The notes below the pieces were generated by a model. The model was not told the origin of the DNA and did no database searches. It saw nothing but the letters and a program-made list of their open reading frames with translations. From Octopus sinensis (taxonomy: Eukaryota), in assembly GCF_006345805.1 (NCBI RefSeq), contig NC_043016.1, forward strand, positions 1,860,001 through 1,924,000: 64,000 nucleotides of DNA, read 5' to 3'. A program made the translations under genes and the position numbers. Shown here piece by piece: positions 8,118 to 44,405 of this stretch; the stretch's first letter is position 1; each line of letters begins with the position of its first letter.

Positions 8118-9737
8118 TTGACAGAAACATCTAACGTTAACCTTGACCAGCAGAATGTCATAAAAGAATTAGACCCAGCAGAGAACTACAAGTATCTAGG
8201 GGTAATTGAAGGAGAAGGAATAAGGCATTCAGAGATGAATTCAAAGGATCAGGAAAGAATGTTATCGCAGAGTAAGAGCAATACTCAAGACAGAGCTGAA
8301 TGCGAGAAACAGGATCGAAGCGATCAATGCATTAGCCATACCAGTTGTGACTTACAGTTTCAATATTGTTAACTAGTCAATTACTGAAATATGTAATCTT
8401 GACAGAAAAATTCGAAAACTATTGACAATGCATAGAATGCACCACCCTAAGGCAGATACAGAACGACTTTATCTGACAAGAAAAGAGAAAGGCCGTGGAC
8501 TTTTACAACTGGCAATAACAATGAAGATTGCTACAATTGGCCTAGACACCTACCTGAAAAACTCTGAGGACTGGATGTTAAAACTTGTTTCAAAACATGA
8601 AAACAAGAAAGCATCATACTCAGTAACAAAACAGGCAAAGAAATATCTAAGTGAATTCCGAATACAACAAATTTCGGAATTAGAGATAGACATACAAGAA
8701 ACAAGCACAGAAAAAGCTAAGCGTGTGAAAACCCGTGCTAAATCTGCGGCCTTAGATATTCTGAATGATAAATGGCAAGAAAAACCTCTCTATGGCAAAT
8801 ACCCAAAGGGAGCAAATAATGCAGATGTTGACAAAGCCCTGACCCATCAATGGCTAATGGCCTCTGGCTTAAAATCTGAAACAGAGGGGTTTATCATAGC
8901 AGCTCAAGATCAATGCCTACCAACAAGAAACTACCAGGCCAACATATTAAGATCAGAAGCATCCAACGTGTCGTGTATGCCAGCAACAAAATGAAATCAT
9001 TGACCATGTGGTCTCCAAGTGCAGTCTTCTAGCGCCTACAGAGTATCAACAGACACGATAGAGCTGCACAATATATTCACTGGGTAATCTGCAAAAACCT
9101 GGATTTGCCCCATGAAAAAAACTGGTGGAACACAAACCACCCCCAGTGCTTGAAAATGACAACATCTCACTCTCTGGAACTCCACCATTCAAACTAACAG
9201 AAAGATAGATGCAAATAGGCCAGACATCATATTGAAAGACTTCAGACAAAGAACATGCCTCCTCATTGATATGACTGTCCCAATCGATATAAACGCATCT
9301 GTCAAGACCTACCAAAAACTGAGCAGGTATAAAGATCTTGAAATAGAAATCAGCAAGATGTGGAACCTGAAGACTAAAACAATACCTGTTGTCATAGGTT
9401 CCCTGGGAATGATAGCAAAAGGGGCTGATAGCTATTTAACACAGATACCAGGAAACCCCAAAATGGCAGAAATTCAAAAGATAGTGCTCATGGGAACTGC
9501 TCATACCCTACGCAAAATACTTTCTATGTAATCTCAAGGTTTAAAACAAACATAATTTTCGGTTAAAAAAAAAACAAAAAAATTTTTTTTTTAGACATTC
9601 ATTAGTACAACACCAAAAAATCCCCCCAAATATATGGCACACTAGGCATAACAACATGAACTTCCAACCTGTTGTCTCTTGAGGTCTCTGGGTGAGACTT
9701 GGAGCCAACTTGTACAAATATAAAGCAAAACTCAAAC

Positions 9738-9740
<3 letters not shown>
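8118..9740 (+). mobile_element. 5'-truncated R4/Dong-clade RLE LINE, lineage A
   Basis: ORFs 8118-8372, 8422-8994 and 9232-9531: RT end YKYLGV, MHHPKADTERLYL..GRGL, QDQCLPTRNY, RPDIILKD..IDMTVP. (AAT)n on both sides (7990-8117 and 9741-9900). Confidence 0.92.
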
Positions 9741-9802: not shown

Positions 9803-10405
<603 letters not shown>

Positions 10406-11099: not shown

Positions 11100-13995
11100 T
11101 TACTCACAAGAATATGCTGCCGAGAATGGTGAAATAATCGAGATAGATTGTTTAAAACGGTGAAGACCTGGCTATTAATCAGGATTTTGAATCTATTAAA
11201 TTTATGTGCGACTTTTAAAAGGCTGACCAATAGAGACTAAATCAAGTGACAAGTAAAGTTAATACTGTATTGAATCATATTGAAACAAATAACCTCATGA
11301 AGACAGCAAATAGGATTGTTACAGAAAGGATAGGATTGAAGACCAATGAGAACAGAACATTGATCAAAAGAAAAGGAAATAGACAAGCTTGGTAGAAAAG
11401 AAGAATATCAGAAGATGTAAGCTCCCTGAACAATGTAGTGTCAATACTTGATTGGAAAAGAAGAGGAGAATTGAAGAATGATCGCTAATTTGTAAAATTA
11501 AAGATGTATAATGTTGATACAAAAGGCCTGAATGTTGTAATTGAAAAACTGAAGCAGCGCATACTTGCCAAGAAAGCAAAGCTCACTAGGTTTGAACAAC
11601 GGATTAAAAGATAGCGGGAAAAGCAATTGCTTAGAATCGACCAAGAGAGATATTATCAAGAAATTAATGATGACTTAGAACGTGAAAGATAGTTCCTGGT
11701 GCTGATGGAAGTCGACAGTTTGGGAGTAAGATGTGGAGTAAGCAATAACAACACAATACTGGAGCTGAATGGTTCTGCAGCCTGAAGCAAACAAATTATC
11801 TTCAGCAAGAAGCTATTCTCTTTACCGAAGATAGCATAAAAAAAATATTAGCAAAACGATGAGCAATTGGAAAACAGCAGGACCTGATGGGTTACAGGGA
11901 TTTTTGATAAAAAGAAATTCAGTAGGTGCCATAAATTGACTGCAGAGCAATTTAATGCATTGATTGAGGGAGAAGAAATCCCGCGGTGGTTGATCAAGTA
12001 ATGTTGTGCTCGGAGGAAGGAAATGCTGCCGACAATTACAGATCAATTTCTTGCTTTTCATTAATGTGGAAGTTATTGCCTGGAAGGATTGCAAGATAAA
12101 TGTTGATAATATCTTACCATTGGAACAAAAAGTTGCAGTGGTACCAAAGACCAATTATTGATAGTAAAATTGGTAGTGTAAGATTGTAAGCTAATGAAAG
12201 CAAATTTGGGAATGGATTGTGTTGATTACCGCAAAACTCAAAATTTGATTCTGCATTTGTGGATCATTGAGTGTGTAGATATGCTTGGAATTTGCTAGGA
12301 ATGTAACGTTTTTTGAAGAAAAGAATGGTGGAGGTGTAAAACTGAGTTGGCATCATACAGACAGAGCTTTGGCACCCTGGGCATCAGAAGATTTTCCAAG
12401 GCGATTACTTATCTCCATTGCTTTTTATACTTTGCATGATCCCTCTGACCTTGGTGCTGGGGAAAGTGAACCTAGGTTATCAGCTAAAGGGAAAATCTCA
12501 ATTAATCACTTCCTTTACATGGATGATTTGAAATTGTATGGCAAGGATGAAGTACAAGTGAGGACCTTAGTGATTACGGTCCACTGCTTTGGTACTGATA
12601 TTAGGATGGAATTCGAACTCAATAAGTGAGGTGTAATGAGCATGAAAAGAAGCAACGTACAGTACCTGGCATGGATAGAATTACCAAGTAGAGAACTGAT
12701 TAAACAAATTGAAAAGAAACGCTATAAATCATGTAGAAGGAAATGAAAGAAAGCTGAAGAAAGAATATTTCCGAAGACTATGATCGTTGCTACTTTCAAA
12801 ATTGACTGGATGGAATAAAATCTTCGGTATGGAGCTGGAATCAGAAACATTAGAAAGAACTAATGAGCATGGATACGAAGACACAGAAAATATTGACCGT
12901 ACCCGGAGCATTCCATCTCAAGAGTGGAACTGATATATTGTACTTGTTCAGAAGATAGGGTGAGAGAGGTTTAATCAGTTGCCAGGATTATGTTGAATCA
13001 GAAAAAAAAACCCAGCTTAGAGTGGCATGTAAAAAATGCCGTGGAATCATTGTTGAACCGTAAAGTCTGGCATCATCAAAATTAATAATTGTGCGAAGAA
13101 AGAAAAACTTAAAGAGAAAAAGATCACGTTTAAAGAAATAGCATGGAAAGAAAATATATACGGTCAGTTTGGAAGAGATATGAGCGACAAGATCGATACA
13201 GAATGCCATAGGTTAGGGATGCGAGAAGTGATCTGGGGGTAGAGACTGAAGCACTTATATGCACAGTACTAGAACAAGCTTTAAGGACGAACTATGTGAA
13301 GTGTAAAATGGACAGCAAAACTGGGAGCAACAAATGCAGAATGTGTGGCAAGAAGGCTCAAACGGTGTGGCCCATTGTCAGTCAACCCCAAAATTGGCAC
13401 AACGCGTATACAAACGACATGACAGCATGACAAGGATGATCCGTTGAGGGCTCTGTGGAATTACAGACCACAAAGAGGAAATAGTTGTAAGACCAAATCT
13501 TAGAAGTAGTTACTGAGAATGAAGACTGCTAAATCCGGTGGAATGCAATGATTCAGTGTGACCATCAGATCAGATATCGGAAACCTGACATTCTTGTGGT
13601 GAACGAAAAAGAAAATAAAAACTTGCATGATAATCGACATAGCCTGTCCTGAAAAGATGTTATTGCCTATGTATTTACTGCTTGGATTTTATTCCATCCA
13701 GTCAATGAGAAAGAAAAAAACAGTGAAAAGCTATGACGATTTGAAGTGGGGAAATAGGCAGGTTGTGAGCAATGAAGAAAGTGAACATGATAACAACAGT
13801 AATTGGCGCACTTGGAAGTATCAGCAATTAAAAAAACATGGGTTCACCTAGAAAAATTATCATTGCTTGGAACTGTAAGAATTCTCCGCAGGGTTCTTGA
13901 AACATGATCAGTAACGCAGTCTCACCTTAGTCTGCTGGCTGTGGACAGCTACACTTTCCATCATACCCAGCAAGATAAGCTAAGAATTTTCATCA
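11100..13995 (+). mobile_element. Long decayed R4/Dong-like LINE (pre-RT region, RT, CCHC, RLE)
   Basis: NWKTAGPDGLQG, HFLYMDDLKLYG..MEFELNK, ETEAL, KCRMCG, RKPDILVV..IIDIACP; many stops and frameshifts; 3' end abuts (TAC)/(TAA)/(CAA)n. Confidence 0.8.

Positions 13996-18676: not shown

Positions 18677-18759
<83 letters not shown>
18676..18759. repeat. (TATC)n tract abutting Tx1 copy 1
   Basis: Direct. Confidence 0.95.
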
Positions 18760-18760
<1 letters not shown>

Positions 18761-19168
18761 CTTCCTTCAAACGGGAAGGAAGAGCTATTTTCATCATCCT
18801 TGTGGCTATGTCGAAAGAATGTATCTGGTGGACGCGTCTGAAAGGATTAGAGACAAACACTTTCCTCTCTGGCCAATCTCTCATCAACTTCTTCAAGTAT
18901 CACTTGAAAAGGAAAGTGAGAGTAGAGAGGCAAGTTTTGTCTAGCGAATGTTTTAAAAAAAGATGGGTGAATGTAGCAAGGATGGCACGTATGAATGACG
19001 AAGCCACCTTGAATATGATCCTATGAACCCAGAAATTGAAAACAGAGGGTTACCCACTTGCAAACAAATGTGGTAACATATAACAATATTGACCAAGGTT
19101 ACCGTGGTCTTTTTCGTAGGCTTTTCTTCCCACAGATAAACCTTACTTGCTTTCCCCTTTAAACCATA
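18760..19168 (+). mobile_element. Tx1/L1-clade LINE copy 1 (ORF2 C-terminus + part of 3' UTR)
   Basis: PSFKREGRAIFIILVAMSKECIWWTRLKG; near-identical to 21140-21540; flanked by (TATC)n. Confidence 0.9.
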
Positions 19169-19180
19169 TATCTATCTATC

Positions 19181-21845
19181 TGGGACGAGTGGCCAGCGTG
19201 AACGCAGGGTGGACTTCAGTGTCTACCTGCACAGCCTGCCACGACTCTCGGCAAGAGAGGCAAAGTGCTGTGAAGGTGCCATAACGGCGGCGGATGTGCG
19301 GGACGCAATGGTAGAATGCTCGAGAGACAAATCGCCGGGTTTGGATGGTCTGCTGTACGAGTTTTACAATTGTATGCCAGACTTGTTTGGGGACGTCTTG
19401 GCAGCAGTATACTGCAACTGGCAGCAAAACGGGAGCACATCCGGAGTTTTGTGAGTCGAGGAAGCGTAACGCTGCTGAAGAAAGATCCAAACAAGGGGGA
19501 CATTATAGATAACTTTAGGCCCATCACTCTGCTCAATGCTGACCTGAAAATGTTGATCAAGGTGTCAGCCAAGAGGTTGGCGCTTGTCATCGAGAAACTG
19601 GTTGACAGGGCGCAAACGTGCGCCGTGCCGGGCCAGACCATCCATGACAACCTCCATCTGATGCGCTACATCATGGAGAGAGTAGTTATGGAACCTGGCA
19701 TGGGTGGGGCCCCTGATCAGTTTGGATCAATCGAAAGCTTTCGATAGGGTAGACTATCGATACTTGGAGGCAGTCCTCAGAGCGGCTGGTTTCGATCCCG
19801 TCTTCCGCGGCTAGATAGCTGCTTTGTACAGAGGCATCAGTTTGGTAATTCGCGTAAATGTACATCTATCGTGACCTCTCGACATTGCACGTTCGGTCCG
19901 TCAGGGATACCCCCTCTCGGCGCTTCTATACGTATTGACTCTTGAGCCACTACTGCGGAAGTTGGCGACTCTGAGGGGCATTCCGCGAGAATTAGGATGC
20001 GGGACGAGCGTGTCTGCATACGCGGACGACGTCACCGTCATAGATTCAAGCCACGAGCATATCGAGCTGGTCGGCGAGACACTGAAAGACTACCAAGCGG
20101 TGATAGGAGCGAAAATCAACCGGGAAAAGTCAGTGGGCTTGCGGCTCGGCACCTGGAGAAGCAAGCCCATGCCGTCCACCAGCGCTCCCGTCGTGGGACG
20201 CGGTACGGACGGCCCGGTCGAGTTGCTCGGGGTCTAGTTCGGTCCGGACCTCCAAATGGAGAAGAACAGGAACGAGATAACGAGTAGGGTGGTCTCTCTC
20301 GCCCGGCAATGGGCCGAGAGGAAACTGTCCCTAAAAGCTCGGGCGGAGGTGGCGAACACGTACATCGCGTCCATCATCTACTACCACCTGACCGTCGCAC
20401 CTTGTCGCGACCCTACCATCACCAAACTAGAACGCATTCTCTTCAGCTTCTTGTGGAAAGGATGCGTCCCGATAGTCAGGCGATCCATTTGCTGTCAACA
20501 CCCATTAAAGGGATGGCTGGGCATGCCGTGGTTGATGATGCGCAGACACGCGCTGAGACTGTGACATCTCCGGCTCTATGTAGACGACGGTGAACAGGTG
20601 TGGTCGCCGTTTGTGAGGCACGCTTTCCCGCAATTCGTCTCCATGACCGAACTGCAGTCGTGGATTAAAAAGAGGCCGAGGAAGGGCGAATGGCACCGCG
20701 AGTGTCGCGTTGCTCTCAAGCAACTATGCCGCCCCGGGTTGACCTTGAGCGACTTCAACACAAGCAAAGCATTCTATAGGGGATTAGTGGAGGGGAGGTA
20801 CGACAACGATTTTAGGGCGAACCTGGGCGTCGACGAGGAATACTTGACCCGCCTGTCTGAGACGACTTTCGGGCCGGGACCAATGGACAACTTCCAGAGA
20901 TCCCTGGCCTGGCAGTGCTACCGAGAAGCGCTACCCGTTCGGGATAAGCTCTATAGGCATAGCTCGAGAAACACGGGGCCGACCTGCCCGAGAGGCGGTC
21001 AGAGCGACGAAACCGTTATGCACGCAATCGTGCAGTGTCCAACAATTTCCGACCTGTGGGCTTATGTCGAACGACTGCTGTCACGTGTGGGACTTGTCGG
21101 TTTATCAGCCGAGTCTATCGTTAATATCGTCACGCCTCCTTCCTTCAAACGGGAAGGAAGAGCTATTTTTATCATACTTGTGGCTATGGCGAAAGAATGT
21201 ATCTGGTGGACGCGTCTGAAAAGGATTAGAGACAAACACTTTCTCTCTGGCCAATCTCTCATCAACTTCTTCAAGTATCACTTGAAAAAGGAATGTGAGA
21301 GTAGAGAGGCAAGTTTTTGTCTAGCGAATGTTTTAAAAAAAGATGGGTGAATGTAGCAAGGATGGCACGTATGAATGACGAAGCCCCTGAATATGATCTT
21401 ATGAACCCAGAAATTGAAAACAGAGGTACCCACTTGCAAACAAATGTGGGTAACATATAACAATATTGACCAAGGTTACCGTGGTATTTTTCGTAGGCTT
21501 TCTCCCCACGGGATAAACCTTACTTGCTTTCCCCTTTACACCTATATCGTAACACTGTGATACACGATCTCTATTGATCGATCCTTTTTTTTTCCTCTTT
21601 CCCTTTTTTCCCCTTTTTCTTCTTTTTCATTTCTCTTTCCTTTGTTCCTTTCCCTTTCTTTTTTTCTTTTATTCTTTTTTTTATTTTATTCTATTTTTTT
21701 CCTTTTTTTTGTTCTTTTCTTCCCTTTTACGATCCTTTTGATCGAAAACCTACGCCACCCCGTTTTTTCATCCACCAAAAAGAAAAGCTCTACCTTGTAA
21801 CTTGTCCCATCTGTGTGCAGCCCTGTGTGACCAATAAAGAAAACT
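19181..21845 (+). mobile_element. Tx1/L1-clade LINE copy 2 (5'-truncated ORF2 RT to 3' end)
   Basis: SPGLDGLLYEFY, FRPITLLNADLK, SAYADDVT, C-terminal zinc region YREALPVRDKL..CPR..ETVMHAIVQC; ends aataaagaaaact-(tatc)n. Confidence 0.93.
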
Positions 21846-21886
21846 TATCTATCTATCTGTCTGTCTGTCAGTCTGTCTGTCTGTTA

Positions 21887-21937
<51 letters not shown>

Positions 21938-21971
21938 ATATTATCTATCTATCTATCTATCTATCATCTAC

Positions 21972-22007
<36 letters not shown>

Positions 22008-22073
22008 ATCTATCTATCATCTATCTATCTATCTATCTATTATATCTATCTATCTATCTATCTACTATCTATC
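21846..22073. repeat. Degenerate (TATC)n spacer between Tx1 copies 2 and 3
   Basis: Direct. Confidence 0.95.
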
Positions 22074-24974
22074 TAGCAAAGCACTAGCCATAGATAGAAA
22101 TAGAGTAGAGGGTGAGCTAGTTAAGAAGCTAGAAGTGGAACTAGAAGCGGCATCACATCCGACGTTTTGGCGGCGAGGTTGGCCCTTCGACCAACCACTT
22201 CAACGCCAAAACACGAAGGATGTGCCGTCAGAGCTAGGATGCGTGCTCTAGGAACGAGGTGTTGGAGCCGCGAGAGAGAGGCCCGGGTGGCGGAGGCGCA
22301 GCAGGGCAAACAAAGCCCACCATTCGGTCTCTGGTAGATGCACAAGGGCGGCGAATTGTTCGAGCCCAGCAAGATGTGCGAGACATTCAGCGGCACTTTG
22401 CCCGACTGTACGGGACGAGTGTGAGCGTGAACGTAGGGGGAGATGGGATTCAGTGCCTACCTGCACAGCCTACCACGACTCTCGGAAGAGAGGCAGAGTC
22501 CTGCGAAGGTGCCATCACGGCGGCGGATGTGAGGACGCAATGGCAGGAATGCGAGAGACAAATCGCCGGGTTTGGATAGTCTGCCCTACGAGTTTTACAA
22601 TTGTATGCCAGACTTGTTTGGAGACGTCTATTGGCAGCGGTTTATACTGCAACTGGCAGCAAACACGGAGCATTAACCGGTTTGTGAGTCGAGTAGCTGT
22701 AGCACTGCTGAAGAAAGATCCAAACAAGGGGAACTTATGGCATAACTTTAGACCAATCACTCTGCTCAATGCAGACCTGAAATTTTGACAAAGGTGTTGC
22801 CCAAGAGGGGTTGGCGCTTGCATCGAGAAACGGTCGACAACGCACAAAACGTGCGCCGTGCCGGGCCGGAGCTTCCATGACAACCTCCATCTGATGCGCT
22901 ACATCATAGACAGGGTAGTTAACGAACCTGGCATGGGTGGGGCCCTGATCAACTTGGATCAATCGAAAGCTTTCGATAGGGTAGACCATCGATACTTGGA
23001 GGCAGTCCTGAGAGCGGCTGGTTTCGGTCCCGTCTTCCGCGGCTGGATAGCTGCCTTGTACAGAGGCATCCGTTCGGTAATTCGCGTGAATGGACATCTA
23101 TCGAGACCTCTCGACATTGCACGTTCGGTCCGTCAGGGATGCCCCCTCTCGGCGCTTCTATACGTATTGACTCTTGATCCTCTACTGCGGAAGCTGGCGA
23201 CTCTGAGGGGCATCCTGCGAGAATTAGGATGCGGGACGAGCGTGTCTGCATACGCGGACGACGTCACCCTCATAGTGTCAAGCCACGAGCACATCGAGTG
23301 GGTCGGCGAGACACTGAAAGACTACCAAGCGGTGACAGGAGCAAAAATCAACCGGTAAAGTCAGTGGGCTTGCGCTCGGCACCTGGAGAAGCAAGCCCAT
23401 GCCGTCCACCAGTACCTCCGTCGTGGGACTCTGGACATACTGCTCGGTTGAGTTGCTCGGGTCTGATTCGGTCCGGACCTCCAAATGGAGAAGAACTGAA
23501 CGAGATAACGAGTAGGGTGTCACTCTCGCCCAGCAATGGGCCGAGAGGAAACTGTCCCTAAAAGCTCGGGCGGAGGTGGTGAACGCGTACATCATCGCGT
23601 CCATCATCTACTACCGCCTGACCGTCGTACCTTTTCCGACCTTACCATCACCAAACTAGAACGCATTCTCTCCGCTTCTTGTGGAAAGATGCGTCCCGAT
23701 GGTCAGGCGATCCATTTTCTGTCAACACCCGTTAAAAGGAGGACTGAGCATAGCCGTGGTTGATGATGCGCAGACACGCGCTGAGACTTGCGACATCTCC
23801 GGCTCTATGTAGACGACGATGAACAGGTGTGGTCGCCGTTTGTGAGGCACGCATTCCCGCAACTTGTCTCCATGACCGAACTGCAGTCGTGGATCAAAAA
23901 GAGGCCGAGGAAGGGCGAATGGTACCGCGAGTCGCGTTGCTCTCAAGCAACCTCTGCCGTCCTGGGTCGACCTTGAGTGACTTCAACACAACCAAAGCAT
24001 TCTATAGGGGACTAGTGGAGGGGAGGTACGACGACGATCTCGGGGCAAACCTGGGCGTCGACGAGGAATACCTGACCCGCCTGTTTCGAACGACTTTCGG
24101 CCCGGGACCTAGGACAACTTCCAGAGATCCCTGGCCTGGCGGTGCTACCGAGAAGCGCTACCCGTTCGGGATAAGCTCTATAGCATAGCTCGAGAAACAC
24201 GGGGCCGACCTGCCCGAGATGCGGGTAGAGCGACGAAACCGCTCTGCACGCAATCGTGCAGTGTCCAGCAATTTCCGACCTGTGGCTTATGTCGAACGAC
24301 TGCTGTCACGTGTGGGACGTGTCGTTTTATCAGCCGAGTCTATCGTTAATATTGTCACGCCTCCTTCCTTCAAACGGGAAGGAAGAGCTATTTTTATCAT
24401 ACTTCTTGTGGCTATGGCGAAAGAATGTATCTGGTGGACGCGCCTGAAAGGATAGAGACAAACACTTTCTCTCTGGTCAATCCTCATCAACTTCTTCAAG
24501 TATCACTTGAGGAGGAAAGTGAGAGTAGAGAGGCAAGTTTTGTCTAGTGAATGTTTTAAAAAAAGATGGGTGAATGTAGCAAGGATGGCACGTATGAATG
24601 ACGAAGCCACCTTGACTATGATTCTATGAACCATAAAAATACTAGAGTTGCTTATTTGCAAAAAAAAAAAAAAGAAAGAAATATAACATGTGACTTCATT
24701 GACCGAGGTTACCGTGGTCTTTTCCGTAGGCTTTTCTTTCCACGGGTAAACCTCACCTGTCCTCCCCTTTACACTTCATATTGACATTTCTGTGATAACG
24801 ATCCCTATTGATCAATTTTTTTTTTTCGTCTCCCCCTTTTTTTAACCCCCCCTTTTTTGTCCTCTTTCTCTCCTTTACGATCCCTTTTGATCGAACACCC
24901 CCCCTTTTTTTTACTTCAAAAGAAAAGCTCTACCTTGTAATTGTTCTATCTGTTGCAGCCCTGTGTGGCTAATA
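22074..24974 (+). mobile_element. Tx1/L1-clade LINE copy 3 (5'-truncated), runs into the gap
   Basis: GGALINLDQSKAFDRVDHRYL, SVRQGCPLSALLY, YADDVT; many frameshifts; 3' UTR colinear with copies 2 and 4. Confidence 0.93.
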
Positions 24975-27979: not shown

Positions 27980-28441
27980 AGTGAGAGAGCAACGACCAAT
28001 ATAACCATCATGACTACTCACCTTATAAGGGTTCACCTGACACATGTATCACAATTATATGTGCACGACATGGGGATCTCATATCAAGATAAACATAAGA
28101 TGACCTTGTAGGTGGGGCTCAATAAGACTTTTTTTCATGTTAAGTGGCCCATGCTACTCAAAAAAATCTTTGAATAAAAACACCAAAGAATCCCTCTCAA
28201 CATATAGCTATGATGCTCCCCCATGACTTCTGCTCGTGATCACATATGCACACATCGTCAGCCACTAAGGGACATGCTCAACTGTTAAAGTCAAACAACT
28301 GACAAGCAAATCTGTGGTATTGAGCAGAATATTTGCTGTAGCCCATCTTTTATACCAAGACAAACAATGTACATGATAACACTTCCAATCAGTTAAGATC
28401 AGAAGCCATGAGAACCACTGCCTGGTAGGGCATCAGGGCAT
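27980..28441 (-). mobile_element. ~555-bp TAA-embedded element, internally deleted diverged copy
   Basis: Colinear with 29664-30218 and has the same catcagggcat terminus. Confidence 0.85.
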
Positions 28442-28461
28442 TTATTATATTTTTTTTATTA

Positions 28462-28508
<47 letters not shown>

Positions 28509-28516
28509 TATTATTG

Positions 28517-28553
<37 letters not shown>

Positions 28554-28567
28554 TATTATTATTGTTA

Positions 28568-28634
<67 letters not shown>

Positions 28635-28702
28635 CATTATATCATCATCATCACATCATCATCATCATCAACATCATCATCATCATCATTATTATTATTA
28701 TT

Positions 28703-28736
<34 letters not shown>

Positions 28737-28743
28737 CCATCAC

Positions 28744-28796
<53 letters not shown>

Positions 28797-28868
28797 CCAT
28801 CACCATCATCATCATCATCATCATCATCATCATTATCATTATCATCATCATCATCATCATTATCATCA

Positions 28869-28944
<76 letters not shown>

Positions 28945-28946
<2 letters not shown>

Positions 28947-29416
28947 TATGTTTGACTTTTGCTTTATATTTGTACAAGTTGGCTCCAAGTCTCACCCAGA
29001 GACCTCAAGAGACAACAGGGTTGGAAGTTCATGTTGTTGTTATGCCTAGTGTGCCATATATTTGGGAGGGGGTGTTGTACTAATGAATGTCTAAAAAAAA
29101 GTTTTTTTTTTTTAAATCGAAAATTATGTTTGTTTTAAACCTTGAGATTACATAGAATGTATTTTGCGTAGGATATGAGCAGTTCCCATGAGCACCATCT
29201 TTTGAATTTCTGCCATTTTGGGGTTTCCTGGTATCTGAGTTAGGTAGCTATCAGCCCCTTTTGCTATCATTCCCAGGGCACAGGTATTGACAACAGGTAT
29301 TGATTTAGTCTTCAGGTTCCACATATTGCTGATTTCTATTTCAAGATCTTTATATTTCCTCAGTTTTTGCTAGATCTTGACAGATACGTTTATATCGATT
29401 GGGACAGTCATATCAA

Positions 29417-29417
<1 letters not shown>
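28945..29417 (-). mobile_element. R4/Dong lineage A, 3' end (RLE C-terminus + 3' UTR)
   Basis: Reverse complement of ~9265-9740; trinucleotide tracts on both sides. Confidence 0.9.
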
Positions 29418-29463
<46 letters not shown>

Positions 29464-29465
29464 TA

Positions 29466-29538
<73 letters not shown>

Positions 29539-29552
29539 TATATTATTAATAA

Positions 29553-29584
<32 letters not shown>

Positions 29585-29586
29585 CC

Positions 29587-29617
<31 letters not shown>

Positions 29618-29663
29618 TATTATTATTATTATTATTATTAATATTGTTATTATTATTATTATT

Positions 29664-30218
29664 GAGTGAGAGAGCAGTTCATGCCATCAAAGTGACACTG
29701 GGGTAAAATATACGAAGCCCAATATACCCATCATGACTACCCGTCTGATAAGGGTACCCCAGGCACATGCATCACAACCATATGTGCATGACATGGTGAT
29801 CTCATATCAAGATAAACAGCACCTGACCTTGCAGGTGGGGCCCAGTTAGAATTTTCTTCAGTTTGAGTAGCCCATCCCGCTCAAAAGGTCCCTGAATAAG
29901 GGTTGTTTAAGGATGTTGAACGAAACACCCATGTTTCCAGAGGTGAATTATTCAAACCCCAAAGAATCCCTCTCAACACATGGCTATGATGCTCCCCCAC
30001 TACTTCTGCTCGTGATCAGAGATGCACATATCGTCAGCCACTAAGGGACATGCTCAACTGGTTAAGGTCAAACAACTGACAAGCAAATCTGTGGTATTGA
30101 GCAGAATATTTACTGTAGCCCATCTTTTATACCAAGACAAACAATGTACATGATAACACTTCCAATCAGTTAAGATCAGAAGCCATGAGAGCCACTGCCT
30201 GGTACTGCATCAGGGCAT
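29664..30218 (-). mobile_element. ~555-bp non-coding TAA-embedded element, reference copy
   Basis: Minus strand reads (aat)n-atgccctgatgcagtaccagg...ctgctctctcactc-(aat)n; five copies in the window. Confidence 0.9.
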
Positions 30219-30220
30219 TA

Positions 30221-30255
<35 letters not shown>

Positions 30256-30297
30256 TATTATTATTATTATTATTATTATATTATTATTATTATTATT

Positions 30298-30853
30298 GAG
30301 TGAGAGAGCAGTTCATGCCATCAAAGTGACACTGGGGTAAATATATACGAAGCCCAATATACCCATCATGACTACCCGCTGATAAGGGTACCCCAGGCAC
30401 ATGCATCACAACCATATGTGCATGACATGGTGATCTCATATCAAGATAAACAGCACCTGACCTTGCAGGTGGGGCCCAGTTAGAATTTTCTTCAGTTTGA
30501 GTAGCCCATCCCGCTCAAAAGGTCCCTGAATAAGGGTTGTTTAAGGATGTTGAACGAAACACCCATGTTTCCAGAGGTGAATTATTCAAACCCCAAAGAA
30601 TCCCTCTCAACACATGGCTATGATGCTCCCCCACTACTTCTGCTCGTGATCAGAGATGCACATATCGTCAGCCACTAAGGGACATGCTCAACTGGTTATG
30701 GTCAAACAACTGACAGGCAAATCTGTGGTATTGAGCAGAATATTTACTGTAGCCCATCTTTTATACCAAGACAAAACAATGTACATGATAACACTTCCAA
30801 TCAGTTAAGATCAGAAGCCATGAGAGCCACTGCCTGGTACTGCATCAGGGCAT
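30298..30853 (-). mobile_element. ~555-bp element, tandem second copy
   Basis: Near-identical to 29664-30218, separated by ~80 bp of (TAT)n. Confidence 0.9.
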
Positions 30854-30962
30854 TTATTATTATTATTATTATTATTATTATAATTATTATTATTATTATT
30901 ATTATTATCATTATTATCATTATTATTATCATTATCATTATCAGTATTGTTATTATTATTAT

Positions 30963-32090
30963 TTTTTCTTCTTTCAAATTTGCTTCCATTTCTTGCTGAG
31001 TGTCTTCCCGACACCTAGGGCAAAGAAACTCATAGTATACCTTGGTAGGCCATTAAACTAAACTCAATAGTTAGTTCGTTTTTTTTTTAAGTTAAATAAA
31101 ATACATGAGCAGCAAAGTTTCTCACATCGACAATGCTCTTCTCAATACGTGTGATGTACCAGTTAAGACAATCTTTTGCACTTCTTGCAGGGATGGTAAG
31201 CCAGGGATCATTCTCATATAATTTTCGGTTCCCTTCTTGATCATTCCTAGTGCTCCTACGATCACTGGTATTGTAACCGCCTTGAGATGCCACATTTTCT
31301 CAATTTCAATGAGTAGGTCTTTATATTTTCTGAGTTGTCAAACACTTTCGCTGAGATATTATGATCACAGGGGATGCTCATGTCGATCAATAAGCAAACT
31401 TTATTGTTTTGGTCTTTCACAACAATATCTGGTTTATTGGCTTTGATGGTTCGGTCTGTATGTACTGGAAAGTCCCACAGAATCGTTACATTTTCTCCTT
31501 CAGTTACAGCTTCAGGGTGGTGGATTATACCACTTGTCGGCAGTTTTGATATTGTAATGCCGACTTATTAGCCAGTGTAGATATTGGCCAACTCTGTCAT
31601 GTCTTAATTTATACTCCACTGGTGCTAAGACTTTACAATCAGAGATTAGGTGGTCCACCGTTTCAATCATGTTGCAGAATCGGCATTTTGGGTCTGCTCC
31701 ATTTTTCATCACATTGGCCTGGTAGTTCCGGGTTAATAAGGCTTTGATCGTGAGCAGCCAGGATGAAACCTTCGCTCTCTGCTTTTAGCCCTGAGGTCTG
31801 TAGCCACTGATGGGTTTGCTTCTGGTCAACATCAGCTTGTTTGCTGCGGGCCACATATTTGCCCTGCAGAGGTTTCTCCTCCCACCTATCAACCAATTGC
31901 TCGTGCGCTTTTTTCGTTGCCATCATTTTCACCTTCTTTGCAACGATAGTTGCCGTACTCCCTCGGGTTGTTCAGTTCGGGTATCCTGCACGGGATCAAT
32001 AGCAAATTTTTTGCTTTCCTTTATGATAGAATGAAGCTTCTTTCGTCTCTCGTGATTTTCCACGAGCTTTAGCATCCAGTCATTCGTTAT
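30963..32090 (-). mobile_element. R4/Dong lineage B, 5'-truncated copy
   Basis: PLQGKYV..LKAESEGFILAAHDQ, CRFCN..DHLISDC, RHD; similar to 32165-33290 but with substitutions and indels. Confidence 0.9.
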
Positions 32091-32130
32091 TATATATATA
32101 TGTGTGTGTATACATACACACGTGCATATC

Positions 32131-32163
<33 letters not shown>

Positions 32164-32164
32164 T

Positions 32165-34470
32165 TTTTTTTCTTCTTCTTTCAAATTTGCTATCATTTCT
32201 TGCCGAGTGTCTTCCCGACTCCTAGGGCAAAGAAACTCATAGTATACATTGGTAGGCCATTAAACTAAACTCAGTAGTCCGTTAATTTTTTTTTTTTTTT
32301 GAGCAGCAACAGTTCTCACATCGACAATGCTCTTCTCAATACGTGTGATGTACCAGTTAAGACAATCTTTTGCACTTCTTGCAGGGATGGTAAGCCAGGG
32401 ATCATTCTCATATAATTTTCGGTTCCCTTCTTGATCATTCCTAGTGCTCCTACGATCACTGGTATTGTAACCGCCTTGAGATGCCACATTTTCTCAATTT
32501 CAATGTGTAGGTCTTTATATTTTCTGAGCTTGTCAAACTCTTTCGCTGAGATATTATGATCACAGGGGATGCTCATGTCGATCAATAAGCAAACTTTATT
32601 GTTTTGGTCTTTCACAACAATATCTGGTTTATTGGCCTTAATGGTTCGGTCTGTATGTACTGGAAAGTCCCACAGAATCGTTACATTTTCTCCTTCAGTT
32701 ACAGCTTCAGGGTGGTGATTATACCACTTGTCGGAAGTTTTGATATTGTAATGCCGACTTATAAGCCAGTGTAGATATTGGCCAACTCTGTCATGTCTTA
32801 ATTTATACTCCACTGGTGCTAAGACTTTACATCCAGAGATTAGGTGGTCCACTGTTTCAATCATGTCGTTGCAGAATCGGCATTTTGGGTCTGCTCCATT
32901 TTTCATCACATTGGCCTGGTAGTTCCGAGTTAATAGGCTTTGATCTTGAGCAGCCAGGATGAAACCTTCGCTCTCTGCTTTTAGCCTGAGCTCCGTAGCC
33001 ACTGATGGGTTTGCTTCTGGTCAACATCAGCTTGTTTGCTGCGGGTCACATATTTGCCGTGCAGATGTTTCTCCTCCCAATTATCAGCCAATTGCTCGTG
33101 CGCTTTTTTCATTGCCATCATTTTCACCTTCTTTGCAACAATAGTTGCCGTACTTCCCTCGGGTTGTTCAGTTTGGGCATCCCGCACGAGATCAATAGCA
33201 AATTTTTTGCTTTCCTTTATGATAGAATGAAGCTTCTTTCGTCTCTCGTGATTCCACGAGCTTTAGCATCCAGTCATTCGATATTTCGAGATATTTGGCC
33301 AGTCCAATTGTGTGTTTTTGTAAGCTAGTTCAAATTGGATCAGGCCTCGACCTCCTTGGGCTCTGGGAAGGTAAAGGCGATCTACGTCTGCCTTTGGGTG
33401 GTGCATCCTATTACAAGTCAGCAGCTTGCGTATTTTTCTATCTGTATTCTTTACTTCACTCATATTCCAGTTCAACACATTGTAGCTATAAGTAACAACT
33501 GGAACTGCTAAGTAATTTATAGCTAACACCTTGTTACGTGCATTTAGTTCAGATTTCAGGACTGCACGAACTCTCCTATAACATTCCTTCCTGATTTTCT
33601 CTTTCATGCTTGCATGCTGAATACCAGAGCCTTCATTTATCCCTAAATATTTGTATGTTTGTTCTTGCTCAAGCTCTCTTATGATTGTGTCAACATCTAA
33701 CACGACTGAATTTGTGGTCTTCACTTTCCCTTTCTGGAAAGTGGCCCTGGCACACTTCTCAAGTCCAAACTCCATTCCGATGTCATCGCTGAATGCTTTC
33801 ACGGTGCGCAATAGGCCTTCAAGTTCATTATTGTCTTTACCATAAAGTTTTAAGTCATCCATATAAAATAGATGGCTTATTTTTTTATTGGCAATTTTAT
33901 ACCCATACTCTGTTCTGTTTAATTCACTTGTAAGGGGTATTAGGGCTATGCAGAATATTAAAGGTGAAAGTGAGTCACCTTGAAAAATTCCACAGTTGAT
34001 GTTTATATTTTCTGAGGCAAGTACTCCATTAGAGTGGTATAATTGGAGATTCGTATTCCACAACGACATATTGTGCTTCAGGAAGTTTGAAATCACAGGG
34101 GAAATTTTGAAGATGTCCAGCGATCTCAAGATCCATGGATGCGGTATACTGTCGAAGGCCTTTTTATAGTCAATCCATGCGGTGCTGAGATTTCTGCGCT
34201 TGTTGTGACAGTTCTCAAGGATCATACGATTGATTAGCAGTTGATCTTTGCATCCGTAAGAGCCTCGGCGGCACCCTTTTTGTTCAATGGGGAAAATATC
34301 GTTCTTCTCCATGAATGCATATGTTTTCTCCGCCAGGATAGATGTTAGGATTTTATACGTGGGGATAGACAGGTTATAGGCCGATAGTTTTTTTGGAAGG
34401 TTGGTTTCGTTATTCTTTGGGGTAGTAAGTAATGCCACTTGCTAACCATTCAGGTGTTTTCTTTGGTCTC
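32165..34470 (-). mobile_element. R4/Dong lineage B, RT to RLE
   Basis: ORF 33263-34438 is RT (EQKGC, WIDYKKAFDS, GIFQGDSLSP, HLFYMDDLKLY); ORF 32316-33002 has CRFC..DHLISGC, RHD and KPDIVVKD..IDMSIP; (TAT)n on both sides. Confidence 0.95.
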
Positions 34471-34489
34471 TATTATAATATTATTATTA

Positions 34490-34529
<40 letters not shown>

Positions 34530-34536
34530 TATTATT

Positions 34537-35079
34537 GAGTGAGAGAGCAGTTCATGCCATCAAAGTGACACTGGGGTAAAATATACGAAGCCCAATATAC
34601 CCATCATGACTACCCGTCTGATAAAGGTACACCAGGCACATGCATCACAACCATATGTGCGCGACATGGTGATCTCATATCAAGATAAACAGCACATGAC
34701 CTTGCAGGTGGGGCCCAGTTAGAATTTTCTTCAGGTTGAGTAGCCCATCCCGCTCAAACGGTCCCTGAATAAGGGTTGTTTAGGATGTTGAAAGAACCAC
34801 CCATATTTCCAGAGGTGAACTATTCAAACCCCAAAGAATCCCTCTCAACACATGGCTATGATGCTCCCCCATACTTCTGCTCGTGATCAGAGATGCACAT
34901 ATCGTCAGCCACTAAGGGACATGCTCAACTGGTTAAGGTCAAACAACTGACAAGCAAATCTGGTATTGAGCAGAATATTTGCTGTAGCCCATCTTTTATA
35001 CCAAGACAAAACAATGTACATGATAACACTTCCAATCAGTTAAGATCAGAAGCCATGAGAGCCACTGCCTGGTACTGCA

Positions 35080-35080
<1 letters not shown>
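34537..35080 (-). mobile_element. ~555-bp element, 5' end ~10 nt shorter
   Basis: Colinear with 29664-30218. Confidence 0.9.
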
Positions 35081-35138
<58 letters not shown>

Positions 35139-35159
35139 TATTATTATTATTATTATTAT

Positions 35160-35298
35160 TCTATGTTTGACTTTTGTACAGGTTGGCTCCAAGTCTCACC
35201 CAGAGACCTCAAGAGACAACAGGTTGGAAGTTCACATTGTTGTTATGCCTAGTGTGCCATGTATTTGTTTTTTTTTGTGTTGTACTAGTGAATGTCTC
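35160..35298 (-). mobile_element. R4/Dong lineage A 3' UTR only
   Basis: ctatgtttgac..ggctccaagtctcacccagagacctcaagagacaac, matches 28945-29090. Confidence 0.85.
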
Positions 35299-42339: not shown

Positions 42340-42796
42340 TATAAGTATAATGTGTATAATAAAACAATTAAATAGAAGTATATAAAAAAAATCTGGTCGT
42401 TTAACGTGGTTGACACTTCTCACCTGAACTGTTTTATTGTACATTATAGCAATAAAAGTATCATTTTACATTGCGAGGCTTTAACAACAGTTAAAGGAAG
42501 GTCTAGCAAGGGAATAAACAGATGTTATTGCCAGGAATGGGACATATGCCAATCCCAAGGCACTGTCTTTGGTTACGCTAAATAGAAGTAAATTATGTAA
42601 ACATTTCTGAGACTCTGAAAATAAAATAAAATAAAAGCAAAAGTTTTATTGTTATTTTATTTTTGTTCATAGTAAAGCTAAGTTGATATAAAACAAACAC
42701 TGTTGCTGTTGGTGTCCCCTAACTTCCGGTCAGGCCTCAAAAGTCTCCTTCCATGTACAATACAAGTATTTTTTCGGGTATAGTGTACTAGCACTA

Positions 42797-44060
42797 CATA
42801 CCTACCTACCTACCTACCTACCTACCTACCTAAGTACGAATGTACGTACGTAGTACCTACCTACCAACCTACATACCTACAAACCTACCTAAATACATAC
42901 ATACCTACCTACCAACCTACCTATATACCTACCTACATACCTACATACATACCTAGCTACCTACCTACCTAAATACCTACCTGCATACCTACCAACCTAC
43001 CTACCTATCTACCTACCTACCTACCTATTTACCTACCTACCTACATAACTACCTACCTACCTATATACCTACCTACATACCTACCTACATACCTACCTAT
43101 ATACCTACCTACATACCTACGTACCTACATACCTACCTACCTACCTACCAACCTACCTATATATCTACCTACATACCTACCTACCTACCTACCTATATAC
43201 CTACCTATATACCTACCTACCTAGATACCTACCTACATACGTACCTACCTACATACCTAACTACCTACATACCAACCTACCTACCAACCTACCTACCCAT
43301 ATATCTCCCTAGTTATATACCTACCTACCTACATACCTACCTACCTACCTACCTACCTACCTACTTACCTACCTGCCTACCTACCAACCTACCTAGCTAC
43401 CTACTTACCTACATTTCTACATTCCTACCTACCTACCTAGCTACCTACCTACCTACCTACCTACCAACCTACATACCTACATACCTACCTACCTACCTAT
43501 ATACCTACCTACATACCTACCTACATACCTACCTACCTATATACCTACCTACATACCTACCTACCTACCTACCTACATACCTACCTACATACCTACCTAC
43601 CTACCAACACACTACTACCTACCTACCTACATACATACATACCTACATACCTACCTACTACCTACCTACCTACCTACATACCTACCTACCTACATACATA
43701 CCTACCTACCTACCAACCTACCTACCTACCTACCTACCTACCTACCTACATACCTACCTACCTACCTACCTACCTACCACCTACCTACCTACATACCTAC
43801 CTACATACCTACCTACCTACCAACACACTACCTACCTACCTACCTACTACATACATACCTACATACCTACCTACCTACCTACCTACCTACCTACATACCT
43901 ACCTACCTACATACATACCTACCTACCTACCAACCTACCTACCCTACCTACCTACCTACCTACATACCTACCTACCTACCTACCTACCTACCAACCTACC
44001 TACCTACCTACCTACCTACCTACCTACCTACATACCTACCTACCAACCTACCTGCCTACT
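42797..44060. repeat. ~1.27-kb degenerate (CTAC)/(ATAC)n tetranucleotide array
   Basis: Direct. Confidence 0.95.
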
Positions 44061-44195
44061 TAATTGCAGACATACCTGCTTATCTATCAATCTACCTTTT
44101 AATTATTTAACTACTTGCTTATCTTACAATCGAGGCGATCCCATTTACACCAAAAAACCTATACCCCTAGCTGTGCACCTTCATATGTATGCGTA

Positions 44196-44405
44196 TATAT
44201 CTATATATATAAATATCAGTAAATGTGATGACAAAAGACAAAAGAATAAACGATTATCATATGAACTTCCCTAGCTTGCAGCTGTTTCTGCTATAGTATG
44301 CGGTGGACTCATAGTTGAGTACATTATAGCTTCCATGGAGTTTCGAATATGAATGTCATCGCATTTACTCATAACCGCTCTGTGAGCGACTAAAGCTTCG
44401 TAGTA
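44196..44405 (+). mobile_element. Possible short non-autonomous Helitron
   Basis: tctatatatataaa 5' end, cgctc-tgt-gagcg hairpin, cgtag|t end. Confidence 0.35.

What the first reader, a model, noticed from the sequence alone, without database searches (positions are those of the whole stretch)
29664..30853. Discrete ~555-bp non-coding element that behaves as a non-autonomous partner of TAA-specific R4/Dong LINEs
Seen: five copies (9901, 27980, 29664, 30298, 34537), all in (TAA)n and co-oriented with the R4/Dong LINEs. The 3' end is fixed (ctcactc-(aat)n) and three copies share the same 5' end, ATGCCCTGATG, unlike random LINE truncation. It has no ORF, no tRNA A/B boxes and no obvious similarity to the lineage A or B 3' UTRs. 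The 5' end can pair with the distal region (AUGCCC/GGGUAU, CAGGCA/UGCCUG), suggesting a closed RNA fold. Known: RLE-LINE-dependent short elements are uncommon (Entamoeba EhSINEs, R2 SIDEs). Inference: a site-specific SINE-like parasite with an unknown promoter or 5' processing mechanism.
Basis: partly seen in the sequence, partly recalled or inferred. Interest (0 to 1): 0.8.

Follow-up and report, generated by a model that had tools for sequence, protein, structure and literature searches.

The report
TAA-repeat-specific non-coding retroposon family
The finding is a real, young, very abundant 555-base non-coding mobile element. It copies itself only into TAA microsatellites, almost certainly by borrowing the enzymes of the TAA-specific Dong/R4-type LINEs that sit beside it. 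It is an interesting new example of a known kind of genomic parasite, but not a new kind.

Summary

**What is there**
- The five window copies belong to a 555-nt family with at least 22,000 3' ends in this 2.72-Gb genome, which is probably an octopus.
- Copies differ from the family majority sequence by a median of 1.7%.
- Every copy examined ends ...CTCACTC followed by (AAT)n.
- Nearly all copies lie in (TAA)n, with the sense strand on the TAA strand.

**Evidence for LINE-driven copying**
- In an unbiased sample of 60 copies anchored at the 3' end, half begin at position 1-2. The other half are 5'-truncated at scattered points.
- This pattern marks target-primed reverse transcription of an RNA of defined length.

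**What it lacks**
- It has no ORF, terminal inverted repeats, tRNA head, Rfam match or HDV-like ribozyme fold.
- It has three internal T4+ runs.
- It shows no similarity to any of the three RLE-type LINE lineages (A, B, C) that share its target and its (TAA)n tail. The partner lineage could not be identified.

- The proposed long-range 5'/3' pairing has a probability of about 0. The sense RNA is nevertheless unusually structured (z = -3.1).
- The sharp 5' end need not be a processed end. Full-length copies join the upstream repeat in one fixed register (about 70-77%), while truncated copies do not. The RNA therefore probably starts within the repeat.

**Interest:** moderate.

The parts
29664..30218 (-). 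Full-length 555-nt copy of the element. The sense strand is the window's minus strand. It runs from ATGCCCTGATG... to ...CTCTCTCACTC.
   Evidence: This copy was the query for the genome-wide search.
30298..30853 (-). Second full-length copy, 99.1% identical to the first. The two are in tandem, separated by 79 nt of (TAA)n.
30219..30297 (-). (AAT)n spacer. It serves as the tail of the upstream copy (30298-30853) and as the 5' flank of the downstream copy (29664-30218).
34537..35080 (-). Copy lacking about the first 9 nt, 96.9% identical. A LINE B 3' end plus (AAT)n lies just 5' of it (35161-35200).
27980..28441 (-). Old, diverged copy (80% identity) with an intact 5' end and internal deletions.
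9901..10405 (+). Old copy (84.6% identity), 5'-truncated near element position 58. It is on the plus strand because the TAA repeat is on the plus strand here. It sits just downstream of a LINE B 3' end and its (TAA)n tail.
32159..34471 (-). 5'-truncated lineage-A LINE (Dong/R4-like, with RT and C-terminal parts), lying in the same (TAA)n array.
   Evidence: The intact relative P0001 was analysed.
30955..32091 (-). Second 5'-truncated lineage-A LINE. Its 3' end is ...GAAAGAAGAAAAAA followed by (AAT)n.
28960..29430 (-). Lineage-B LINE 3' fragment. Its 3' end is ...CAAATATAAAGCAAAAGTCAAA followed by (AAT)n.
8127..9740 (+). Lineage-B LINE 3' part (about 49% amino-acid identity to lineage A) with its 3' UTR and (TAA)n tail.

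Best explanation
The element is a high-copy, recently active, non-autonomous non-LTR retroposon. I call it SINE-like in lifestyle, but it is not a classical SINE. It appears to be copied in trans by the (TAA)n-specific LINEs of this genome, which carry a restriction-like endonuclease (RLE) and resemble Dong/R4.

**Shown directly**
- It is 555 nt long and has no ORF.
- Its 3' junction, CTCACTC|AAT, is fixed and followed by a templated (AAT)n tail with a median length of 30 nt.
- It inserts almost only into (TAA)n, in a single orientation.
- About half the copies are full length. The rest are 5'-truncated at scattered points.
- About 12% of copies carry a short duplication of their own 5' terminus at the 5' junction.
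- About a quarter of copies sit directly behind the tail of an earlier TAA-tailed insertion, forming co-oriented arrays. The window holds one such array of eight insertions at 27,980-35,200.

**Inferred mechanism**
1. The LINE endonuclease nicks the TTA strand of the microsatellite.
2. The (UAA)n tail of the element's RNA pairs with the nicked strand.
3. The LINE reverse transcriptase copies the RNA by target-primed reverse transcription.

Recognition seems to rest on the tail, possibly helped by RNA structure, and not on a LINE-derived 3' sequence. The element shares nothing else with lineages A, B or C.

**The 5' end**
- The RNA probably begins in the last unit or units of the upstream repeat, or further upstream.
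- The cDNA end can then anneal in register to the target repeat. This produces the apparently exact ATGCCC boundary without any processing.
- Internal T4+ runs and the lack of a small-RNA head argue for Pol II or read-through transcription and against Pol III.
For: **Copy number and ends**
- Searches give the counts and the 5'-start distribution described above.
- All 30 best-scoring copies and nearly all 60 sampled copies lie in (TAA)n in a single orientation.
- Median identity to the majority sequence is 98.3%.

**Signs of reverse-transcriptase integration**
- 14 of 116 copies carry a 5'-junction self-duplication, including truncated copies.
- A LINE A copy shows the same feature (L045).

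**Candidate partners**
- Lineage A is an intact 1,235-aa single-ORF element with an RVT_1 domain. Its best solved-structure matches are R2 proteins, at E = 1e-27 across residues 385-1083.
- Its sequence contains a CCHC motif and a PD...D...K motif (read directly).
- Lineages A, B and C all end in (AAT)n and have 4,508, 7,641 and 10,875 3' ends respectively.

**Register of the 5' junction**
- Searches show the fixed register for full-length copies and no preferred register for truncated copies.

**RNA properties**
- The sense RNA is unusually structured (z = -3.1) while the antisense is not (z = -0.6).
- T4+ runs lie at positions 78, 334 and 512, and the longest ORF is 59 aa.

**Literature**
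- Octopus genomes carry active Dong-R4 LINEs and hundreds of unclassified SINE families (PMC13282606; PMC9115989).
Against: - Trans-mobilisation is inferred and has not been demonstrated.
- No LINE lineage could be tied to the element.
  - The 3' ends share neither sequence nor predicted structure.
  - Upstream neighbours of the element (element 16, C 8, A 3, B 1-2) simply track how abundant each kind of tail is. They do not single out a partner.
- RLE LINEs such as R2 are known for specific 3' UTR recognition, so use of the tail alone would be unusual.
- Some 5' reiterations join directly at A1 with no repeat leader (L017, L056). This implies that some RNAs really do start at A1.
- Only three lineages were compared. 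The O. vulgaris annotation lists five recently active Dong-R4 families, so a lineage with a matching tail could exist.
- Structure conservation could not be tested, because no divergent homologues were available.
Confidence: 0.8

Rival explanations
1. The precise 5' end is made by a self-cleaving ribozyme, HDV-like as reported for the R2 and R4 clades, located in the first 100-200 nt. It would release the element from read-through transcripts.
For: [quoted passage not shown]
- The 5' 100 nt form a stable local domain.
- Some 5' reiterations join exactly at A1.
Against: - Rfam gives no ribozyme match, even at E <= 10 on the element alone.
- A stringent nested double-pseudoknot descriptor gave no hit for cleavage sites from -9 to +3, in the element or in the LINE A 5' end. 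Its false-positive rate was 1 in 300 shuffles.
- A looser descriptor hit no better than shuffled sequences.
- The fixed repeat register of full-length copies is not explained by cleavage at A1 alone.
Confidence: 0.1
2. It is an internally deleted or 3'-UTR derivative of an autonomous LINE, comparable to an R2 SIDE. It would be recognised through LINE-derived ends.
For: It has the same target, tail and orientation as the LINEs. R2 and RTE commonly give rise to such derivatives (PMC5786205).
Against: - No blastn similarity to the whole of LINE A, or to the 3' parts of B and C, even with word size 7.
- The 5' ends differ: ATGCCC... in the element against CAAAGAGTTC... in LINE A.
- None of 60 3'-anchored copies continues into coding sequence.
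- The count of 5' ends (11,990) is about what 48% of 22,181 predicts. That leaves little room for a longer parent sharing the element's ends.
Confidence: 0.07
3. It is a classical Pol III SINE whose head is too diverged to recognise.
For: - It is short, abundant and non-coding.
- There is a weak A-box-like GGCAGTGG at positions 20-27 (read directly).
- The same genome holds tRNA-derived SINEs.
Against: - ARAGORN and Rfam find no tRNA, 5S, 7SL or snRNA similarity.
- There is no B box at a proper distance.
- Three T4+ runs at positions 78, 334 and 512 would be expected to stop Pol III before the 3' end.
- 50% 5' truncation is more like a LINE than a SINE.
Confidence: 0.05
4. It is not a retroposon at all, but a DNA transposon or MITE, or a satellite unit spread by recombination.
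For: Tandem pairs exist: 16 of 112 copies have another copy within 130 nt upstream. A 54-bp-period array of the element's 5' end exists on C1.
Against: - No terminal inverted repeats.
- The 3' end is fixed and the 5' end variable.
- The tail is templated.
- Copies are dispersed over all chromosomes.
- Spacer lengths between tandem copies vary from 20 to 112 nt, as expected for independent insertions into earlier tails.
Confidence: 0.02

Closest known systems
R2 SIDEs (short internally deleted elements of R2) and other bipartite non-autonomous LINE derivatives
   Same: They are non-coding, use the site-specific RLE LINE machinery, and share the parent's target and orientation.
   Different: SIDEs keep the 5' ribozyme and the 3' UTR of the parent R2. 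This element shares no sequence with any LINE lineage examined. Only the (TAA)n tail is shared.
SINEU-3 mobilised by target-specific Tx1-Mar LINEs in crocodilians (Kojima 2015, PMC4494074)
   Same: It is a non-autonomous retroposon that inherits the target specificity of its LINE partner. It is often found in tandem. Transcription from flanking sequence was discussed for it.
   Different: SINEU has a snRNA-derived head and uses an APE-type Tx1 (L1-clade) partner. Here there is no recognisable head, the partner is RLE-type, and the target is a microsatellite.
Alu or SVA with L1 (relaxed recognition through the poly(A) tail only)
   Same: The simple-repeat tail is the only sequence shared between parasite and LINE. 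Both are high-copy and young.
   Different: L1 is APE-type with a loose target. Alu has a 7SL Pol III head and is rarely truncated. Here the tail is (UAA)n and also matches the target, so tail-target pairing can serve both for priming and for specificity.
Dong (Bombyx) / R4 clade LINEs, and the Drosophila I factor with its (TAA)n tail
   Same: They show (TAA)n targets and/or tails. Dong/R4 has a single ORF with RT, a CCHC motif and an RLE.
   Different: Those are autonomous elements. I found no report of a non-autonomous partner for the Dong/R4 clade in the papers searched.
Entamoeba EhSINEs with EhLINEs
   Same: A short non-coding partner of an RLE-type LINE.
   Different: EhSINEs share their 3' ends with the partner EhLINEs and are not microsatellite-specific.

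Membership tests
LINE-dependent non-autonomous retroposon (broad sense) | No coding capacity, a fixed 3' end with a simple-repeat tail, variable 5' truncation, and dispersed high copy number. | tested here: met
LINE-dependent non-autonomous retroposon (broad sense) | Shares target site and orientation with an autonomous LINE present in the same genome. | tested here: met
   LINE lineages A, B and C all sit in (TAA)n with an (AAT)n tail.
LINE-dependent non-autonomous retroposon (broad sense) | Demonstrated mobilisation by the LINE proteins. | not testable with these tools
   Needs a retrotransposition assay.
Classical SINE | A 5' head derived from tRNA, 7SL, 5S or snRNA with an internal Pol III promoter. 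| tested here: not met
   ARAGORN found none. Rfam found none at E <= 10. Internal T4+ runs are present.
Classical SINE | A 3' region derived from the partner LINE's 3' end (stringent type), or a shared simple tail (relaxed type). | tested here: inconclusive
   Only the (AAT)n tail is shared with A, B and C. Other lineages were not examined.
R2-SIDE-type internally deleted LINE | 5' and 3' termini identical to those of a parent LINE. | tested here: not met
   covering both ends of LINE A and the 3' ends of B and C.
HDV-like-ribozyme-processed retroelement | A nested double-pseudoknot ribozyme at the 5' end. | tested here: not met
   A non-canonical fold cannot be excluded.
DNA transposon / MITE | Terminal inverted repeats and target-site duplications of fixed length. 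| tested here: not met
   No terminal inverted repeats. Target-site duplications cannot be read inside a microsatellite.
Dong/R4 clade (for the neighbouring LINEs, not the element) | A single ORF with RT followed by a CCHC motif and a restriction-like endonuclease. | tested here: met
   P0001 has 1,235 aa, an RVT_1 domain and R2-protein matches at E = 1e-27. The CX2CX7HX4C and KPD...D...K motifs were read in the sequence.
Dong/R4 clade (for the neighbouring LINEs, not the element) | Phylogenetic placement of the RT within the R4/Dong clade. | not tested
   No reference sequences were available. The assignment rests on (TAA)n specificity, domain architecture and published octopus annotations.

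The most novel reading that the evidence does not exclude
The element may be a structured Pol II-type RNA that parasitises an RLE-type LINE purely through a (UAA)n tail matching both the LINE's tail and its target. It may also use the target microsatellite as its portable upstream promoter. The AT-rich (TAA)n would act as a TATA-like element, and the element's 5' domain would fix initiation in the last repeat unit. Every insertion would then be born with both a promoter and a priming site. This would be the first described non-autonomous partner of the Dong/R4 clade. It would also be a case of relaxed template choice by an RLE LINE.
Probability: 0.15. Interest if true: 0.65.

Novelty: new member of a known kind. 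Interest (0 to 1): 0.45.

Why it matters
- The family makes up at least about 0.4% of a 2.7-Gb cephalopod genome. That figure comes from 22,181 3' ends at a mean of about 464 nt each, and it is a lower bound.
- The family is young, so it is a live contributor to genome change in a lineage known for repeat-driven genome evolution.
- RLE-type LINEs are being developed as site-specific gene-insertion tools, mainly on the basis of R2. A natural RNA copied efficiently while sharing only a target-matching tail with the LINE would show how little template recognition such enzymes need.
- The family also shows how TAA-tailed insertions create new targets for later insertions. This builds co-oriented arrays and expands the microsatellites.
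- The register test used here compares full-length with truncated copies. It is a simple way to tell whether an apparently exact 5' end inside a repeat is real.

Tried and rejected
1. **Rfam scans** of the 9-kb surroundings and of the element alone gave only low-complexity miRNA artefacts and nothing real. ARAGORN found nothing.
2. **A loose HDV-like descriptor** was uninformative: 132 of 200 shuffles also gave hits. A stringent version found nothing.
3. **Upstream neighbours as a clue to the partner.** LINE C looked enriched at first (8 of about 29). After counting 3' ends genome-wide, the neighbours simply track tail abundance (chi-square about 2.1 on 3 df, calculated by hand).
4. **Divergent 3'-anchored copies** (L092, L093, L061, L083) were checked as possible LINE parents. 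They are truncated copies or segmental duplicates.
5. **Covariation support for the fold.** Older copies differ mostly by random mutations, so there is no usable subfamily structure.
6. **5' register of LINE A genome-wide.** Only one AT-flanked full-length 5' end exists, so this was uninformative.
8. **Pairwise divergence of 3' regions** gave C 96%, element 95%, A 85% and B 71%. This weakly hints that C is of the same age as the element. However, it is confounded by truncation and small sample size.
9. **Literature searches** found no description of a TAA-specific SINE-like element in cephalopods.

Full report
**Setting**

The window is G000:C20:1,860,001-1,924,000 of a 2.72-Gb eukaryotic assembly with 13,516 contigs. 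That size matches the published Octopus sinensis chromosome-level assembly. Octopus genomes are reported to carry active Dong-R4 LINEs and many unclassified SINE families. I did not prove the species directly.

**Checking the observation**

Read on the minus strand, window 29664-30218 is a 555-nt unit. It runs from ATGCCCTGATG... to ...CTCTCTCACTC and is flanked on both sides by TAA repeats. Their coordinates and identities are in the observation check.

Four copies lie on the minus strand and one on the plus strand. In every case the sense strand is the TAA strand, and the neighbouring LINE fragments point the same way.

On the minus strand, from 35,200 down to 27,980, the order is: LINE B 3' end, element, LINE A, LINE A, element, element, LINE B 3' part, element. 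That makes eight co-oriented insertions in one microsatellite locus.

**Genome-wide picture**

- A DNA search returned about 40 copies at 97-100% identity, nearly all full-length.
- Searches give the genome-wide 5' and 3' end counts, with no hits to the reversed control patterns.
- All 30 best-scoring loci lie in (TAA)n in a single orientation.
- To avoid bias towards full-length copies, I fetched the first 60 exact 3'-end matches on contig C1 with 900 nt upstream.
  - 29 begin at position 1-2 and 2 at position 6.
  - 29 are truncated at scattered positions between 47 and 504.
  - The 3' junction is CTCACTC|AAT in 57 of the 60, and the tail has a median length of 30 nt.
  - The seven copies whose 5' flank is not TAA-like are all truncated. 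Two pairs of them are segmental duplicates.
- The median identity of 106 copies to the majority sequence is 98.3%.
- At a mean length of about 464 nt, the family occupies at least about 10 Mb.

A fixed 3' end with a templated tail, plus a mixture of full-length and randomly 5'-truncated copies, is the signature of target-primed reverse transcription of an RNA of defined length.

**What it is not**

- The longest ORF is 59 aa and lies antisense.
- There are no terminal inverted repeats.
- T4+ runs lie at positions 78, 334 and 512.
- ARAGORN finds no tRNA-like head.
- Rfam finds nothing on the element alone, even at E <= 10.
- None of the 60 anchored copies runs upstream into shared or coding sequence.

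It is therefore not a LINE 3' UTR, a MITE, a retrozyme or a classical Pol III SINE.

**The LINEs**

- The RT ORF at window 33263-34441 belongs to a very abundant lineage, A.
- An intact lineage-A copy (L043) is about 4.3 kb long and encodes a single 1,235-aa protein, P0001.
  - It has an RVT_1 domain.
  - Its best solved-structure matches are R2 retrotransposon proteins, at E = 1e-27 over residues 385-1083.
  - Its C-terminus shows a CCHC knuckle and a PD...D...K motif.
- This is the RLE-type architecture expected of Dong/R4. RT phylogeny was not done.
- Lineage B is about 49% identical to A at the amino-acid level.
- Lineage C was discovered in the flanks of element copies.
- All three lineages sit in (TAA)n and end in (AAT)n.
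- Counts of 3' ends are A 4,508, B 7,641 and C 10,875.

The element has no detectable similarity to the whole of A, or to the 3' parts of B and C, even with 7-nt words. The last 120 nt also fold differently. The LINEs end in A-rich, weakly structured sequence, whereas the element's end is GC-richer and paired. The only shared feature is the tail.

**Which lineage is the partner?**

Lineage C's 3' end sits just upstream of 8 element copies, which looked like a clue. However, the upstream neighbours within 130 nt (element 16, C 8, A 3, B 1-2) are proportional to the genome-wide abundance of each kind of tail. They therefore show only that any existing TAA tail is a target, or a template-jump acceptor.

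Pairwise divergence of 3' regions is similar for C (96%) and the element (95%). That comparison is small and confounded. The partner remains unidentified.

**The 5' end**

- Positions 3-6 pair with 98-101, and positions 14-19 pair with 85-90, at P = 0.8-0.99. Together they form a local 5' domain.
- The sense strand folds to -188 kcal/mol (z = -3.1, with 1 of 100 shuffles as good). The antisense strand gives z = -0.6. Strand-specific structure is therefore real. Its conservation could not be tested.
- R4-clade LINEs are reported to have 5' HDV-like ribozymes (PMC5786205), so I searched for one. Rfam found none. A stringent descriptor, with 1 false positive in 300 shuffles, found none in the element or in the LINE A 5' end.

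The most informative result is the register of the upstream repeat.

| Set of copies | TAA\|A1 | ATA\|A1 | AAT\|A1 | Other | Test |
|---|---|---|---|---|---|
| Full-length, perfect repeat flank | 34 | 8 | 2 | - | p = 3e-9 against uniform |
| Truncated | 10 | 12 | 5 | - | not significant; contingency p = 0.003 |
| 100 further full-length copies on C1 | 67 | 16 | 5 | 12 | - |

The 12 'other' copies in the last row are about 5 with the repeat ending AAT directly before T2 and 7 with imperfect repeats.

If the RNA ended at A1 and was joined blindly, all three registers should be equally frequent. If phase-specific top-strand cleavage set the register, truncated copies should show the same bias. 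Neither holds.

The simplest reading is that the template RNA carries at least one repeat unit as a 5' leader. It would initiate in the last unit or units, or further upstream. The cDNA end would then anneal in register to the target, as proposed for R2 elements whose RNA retains upstream 28S sequence (my background knowledge).

Some reiterated 5' fragments join with a TAA before A1 (L010, L019, L025), and others join directly at A1 (L017, L056). RNA 5' ends are therefore probably heterogeneous around -3 to +1.

**Junction duplications**

14 of 116 copies carry a direct duplication of 12-67 nt of their own 5' terminus at the junction. This includes truncated copies, and in four loci the duplication is repeated several times. 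A LINE A copy shows the same feature. A 54-bp-period array of the element's 5' end lies at C1:68.85 Mb. I read these as reverse-transcriptase template jumps at the end of first-strand synthesis. That is an inference.

**Comparison with known elements and novelty**

- The element works like other non-autonomous partners of target-specific LINEs, such as R2 SIDEs and SINEU-3 with Tx1. In sharing only a tail, it resembles Alu with L1.
- It fails the membership tests for a classical SINE (no Pol III head) and for a SIDE (no LINE-derived ends).
- I found no published non-autonomous partner for the Dong/R4 clade in the library searched. The family may still be present, unnamed, among the 'unclassified SINE' or 'unknown' consensus sequences of octopus repeat libraries.
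- I rate it a new member of a known kind, of moderate interest.
- The more novel reading is tail-only hijacking of an RLE LINE with the target microsatellite acting as promoter. It is not excluded, and it has not been tested.

Noticed in passing
window 27980-35200 (minus strand): Eight co-oriented TAA-tailed insertions lie in one microsatellite locus. In order they are LINE B, element, LINE A, LINE A, element, element, LINE B, element. Each new tail seems to offer a target for the next insertion. About 26% of element copies genome-wide have another TAA-tailed retroposon end within 130 nt upstream.
   Followed up: partly
L047:9100-9525; also L019, L055, L064, L074, L095, L103, L108: A third TAA-tailed RLE-LINE lineage, C. 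Its C-terminus reads ...IPIIVGALGMIKK... and its 3' end reads ...CACGCTATAAAAATAAAACTACTG(AAT)n. It has 10,875 3' ends genome-wide, more than lineages A or B, and its copies are very similar to each other (about 96% pairwise).
   Followed up: partly
G000:C1:68851537-68853021 (not fetched): The 5' 30-mer of the element recurs about 27 times at spacings of 54 or 108 bp. This suggests a minisatellite built from the element's first 51 nt or so plus a TAA unit.
   Followed up: no
L017, L019, L025, L010 (5' flanks of the element); L045:2440-2490 (LINE A): Multiple short head-to-tail reiterations of an element's own 5' terminal 14-31 nt lie immediately upstream of position 1. One LINE A copy shows the same thing. 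This is probably template jumping by the reverse transcriptase.
   Followed up: partly
L061:48-270; L029 3' flank; L078, L076 and L049 3' flanks: A tRNA-like SINE of about 220 nt is flanked by the same microsatellite. Its presumed sense strand is followed by (ATT)n, which puts it antisense to the TAA-specific LINEs. Its tails may seed (TAA)n targets for the LINEs and for the 555-nt element. A reverse-complement SINE end lies within 150 nt downstream of 3 of 60 element copies.
   Followed up: partly
L092/L093 and L094/L100: Two pairs of truncated element copies share identical non-repeat flanks. They are local segmental duplications on C1 (21.59 Mb and 21.69/22.58 Mb) and not independent insertions.
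   Followed up: partly
window 12016-12976 (+), 22705-23349 (+), 18759-24564 and 54366-55430: Further RT-bearing LINE fragments only 26-40% identical to lineage A, so they belong to other clades. A repeated segment of 1-3 kb is also shared between about 19-24.5 kb and 54.3-55.4 kb (families D14, D15 and D18).
   Followed up: no
window 5587-6560, 42750-44300, 60054-60395: Long minisatellite and microsatellite arrays with periods of 21 bp, 8/12 bp and 8/36 bp, unrelated to the finding. The window also contains a run of 100 N.
   Followed up: no
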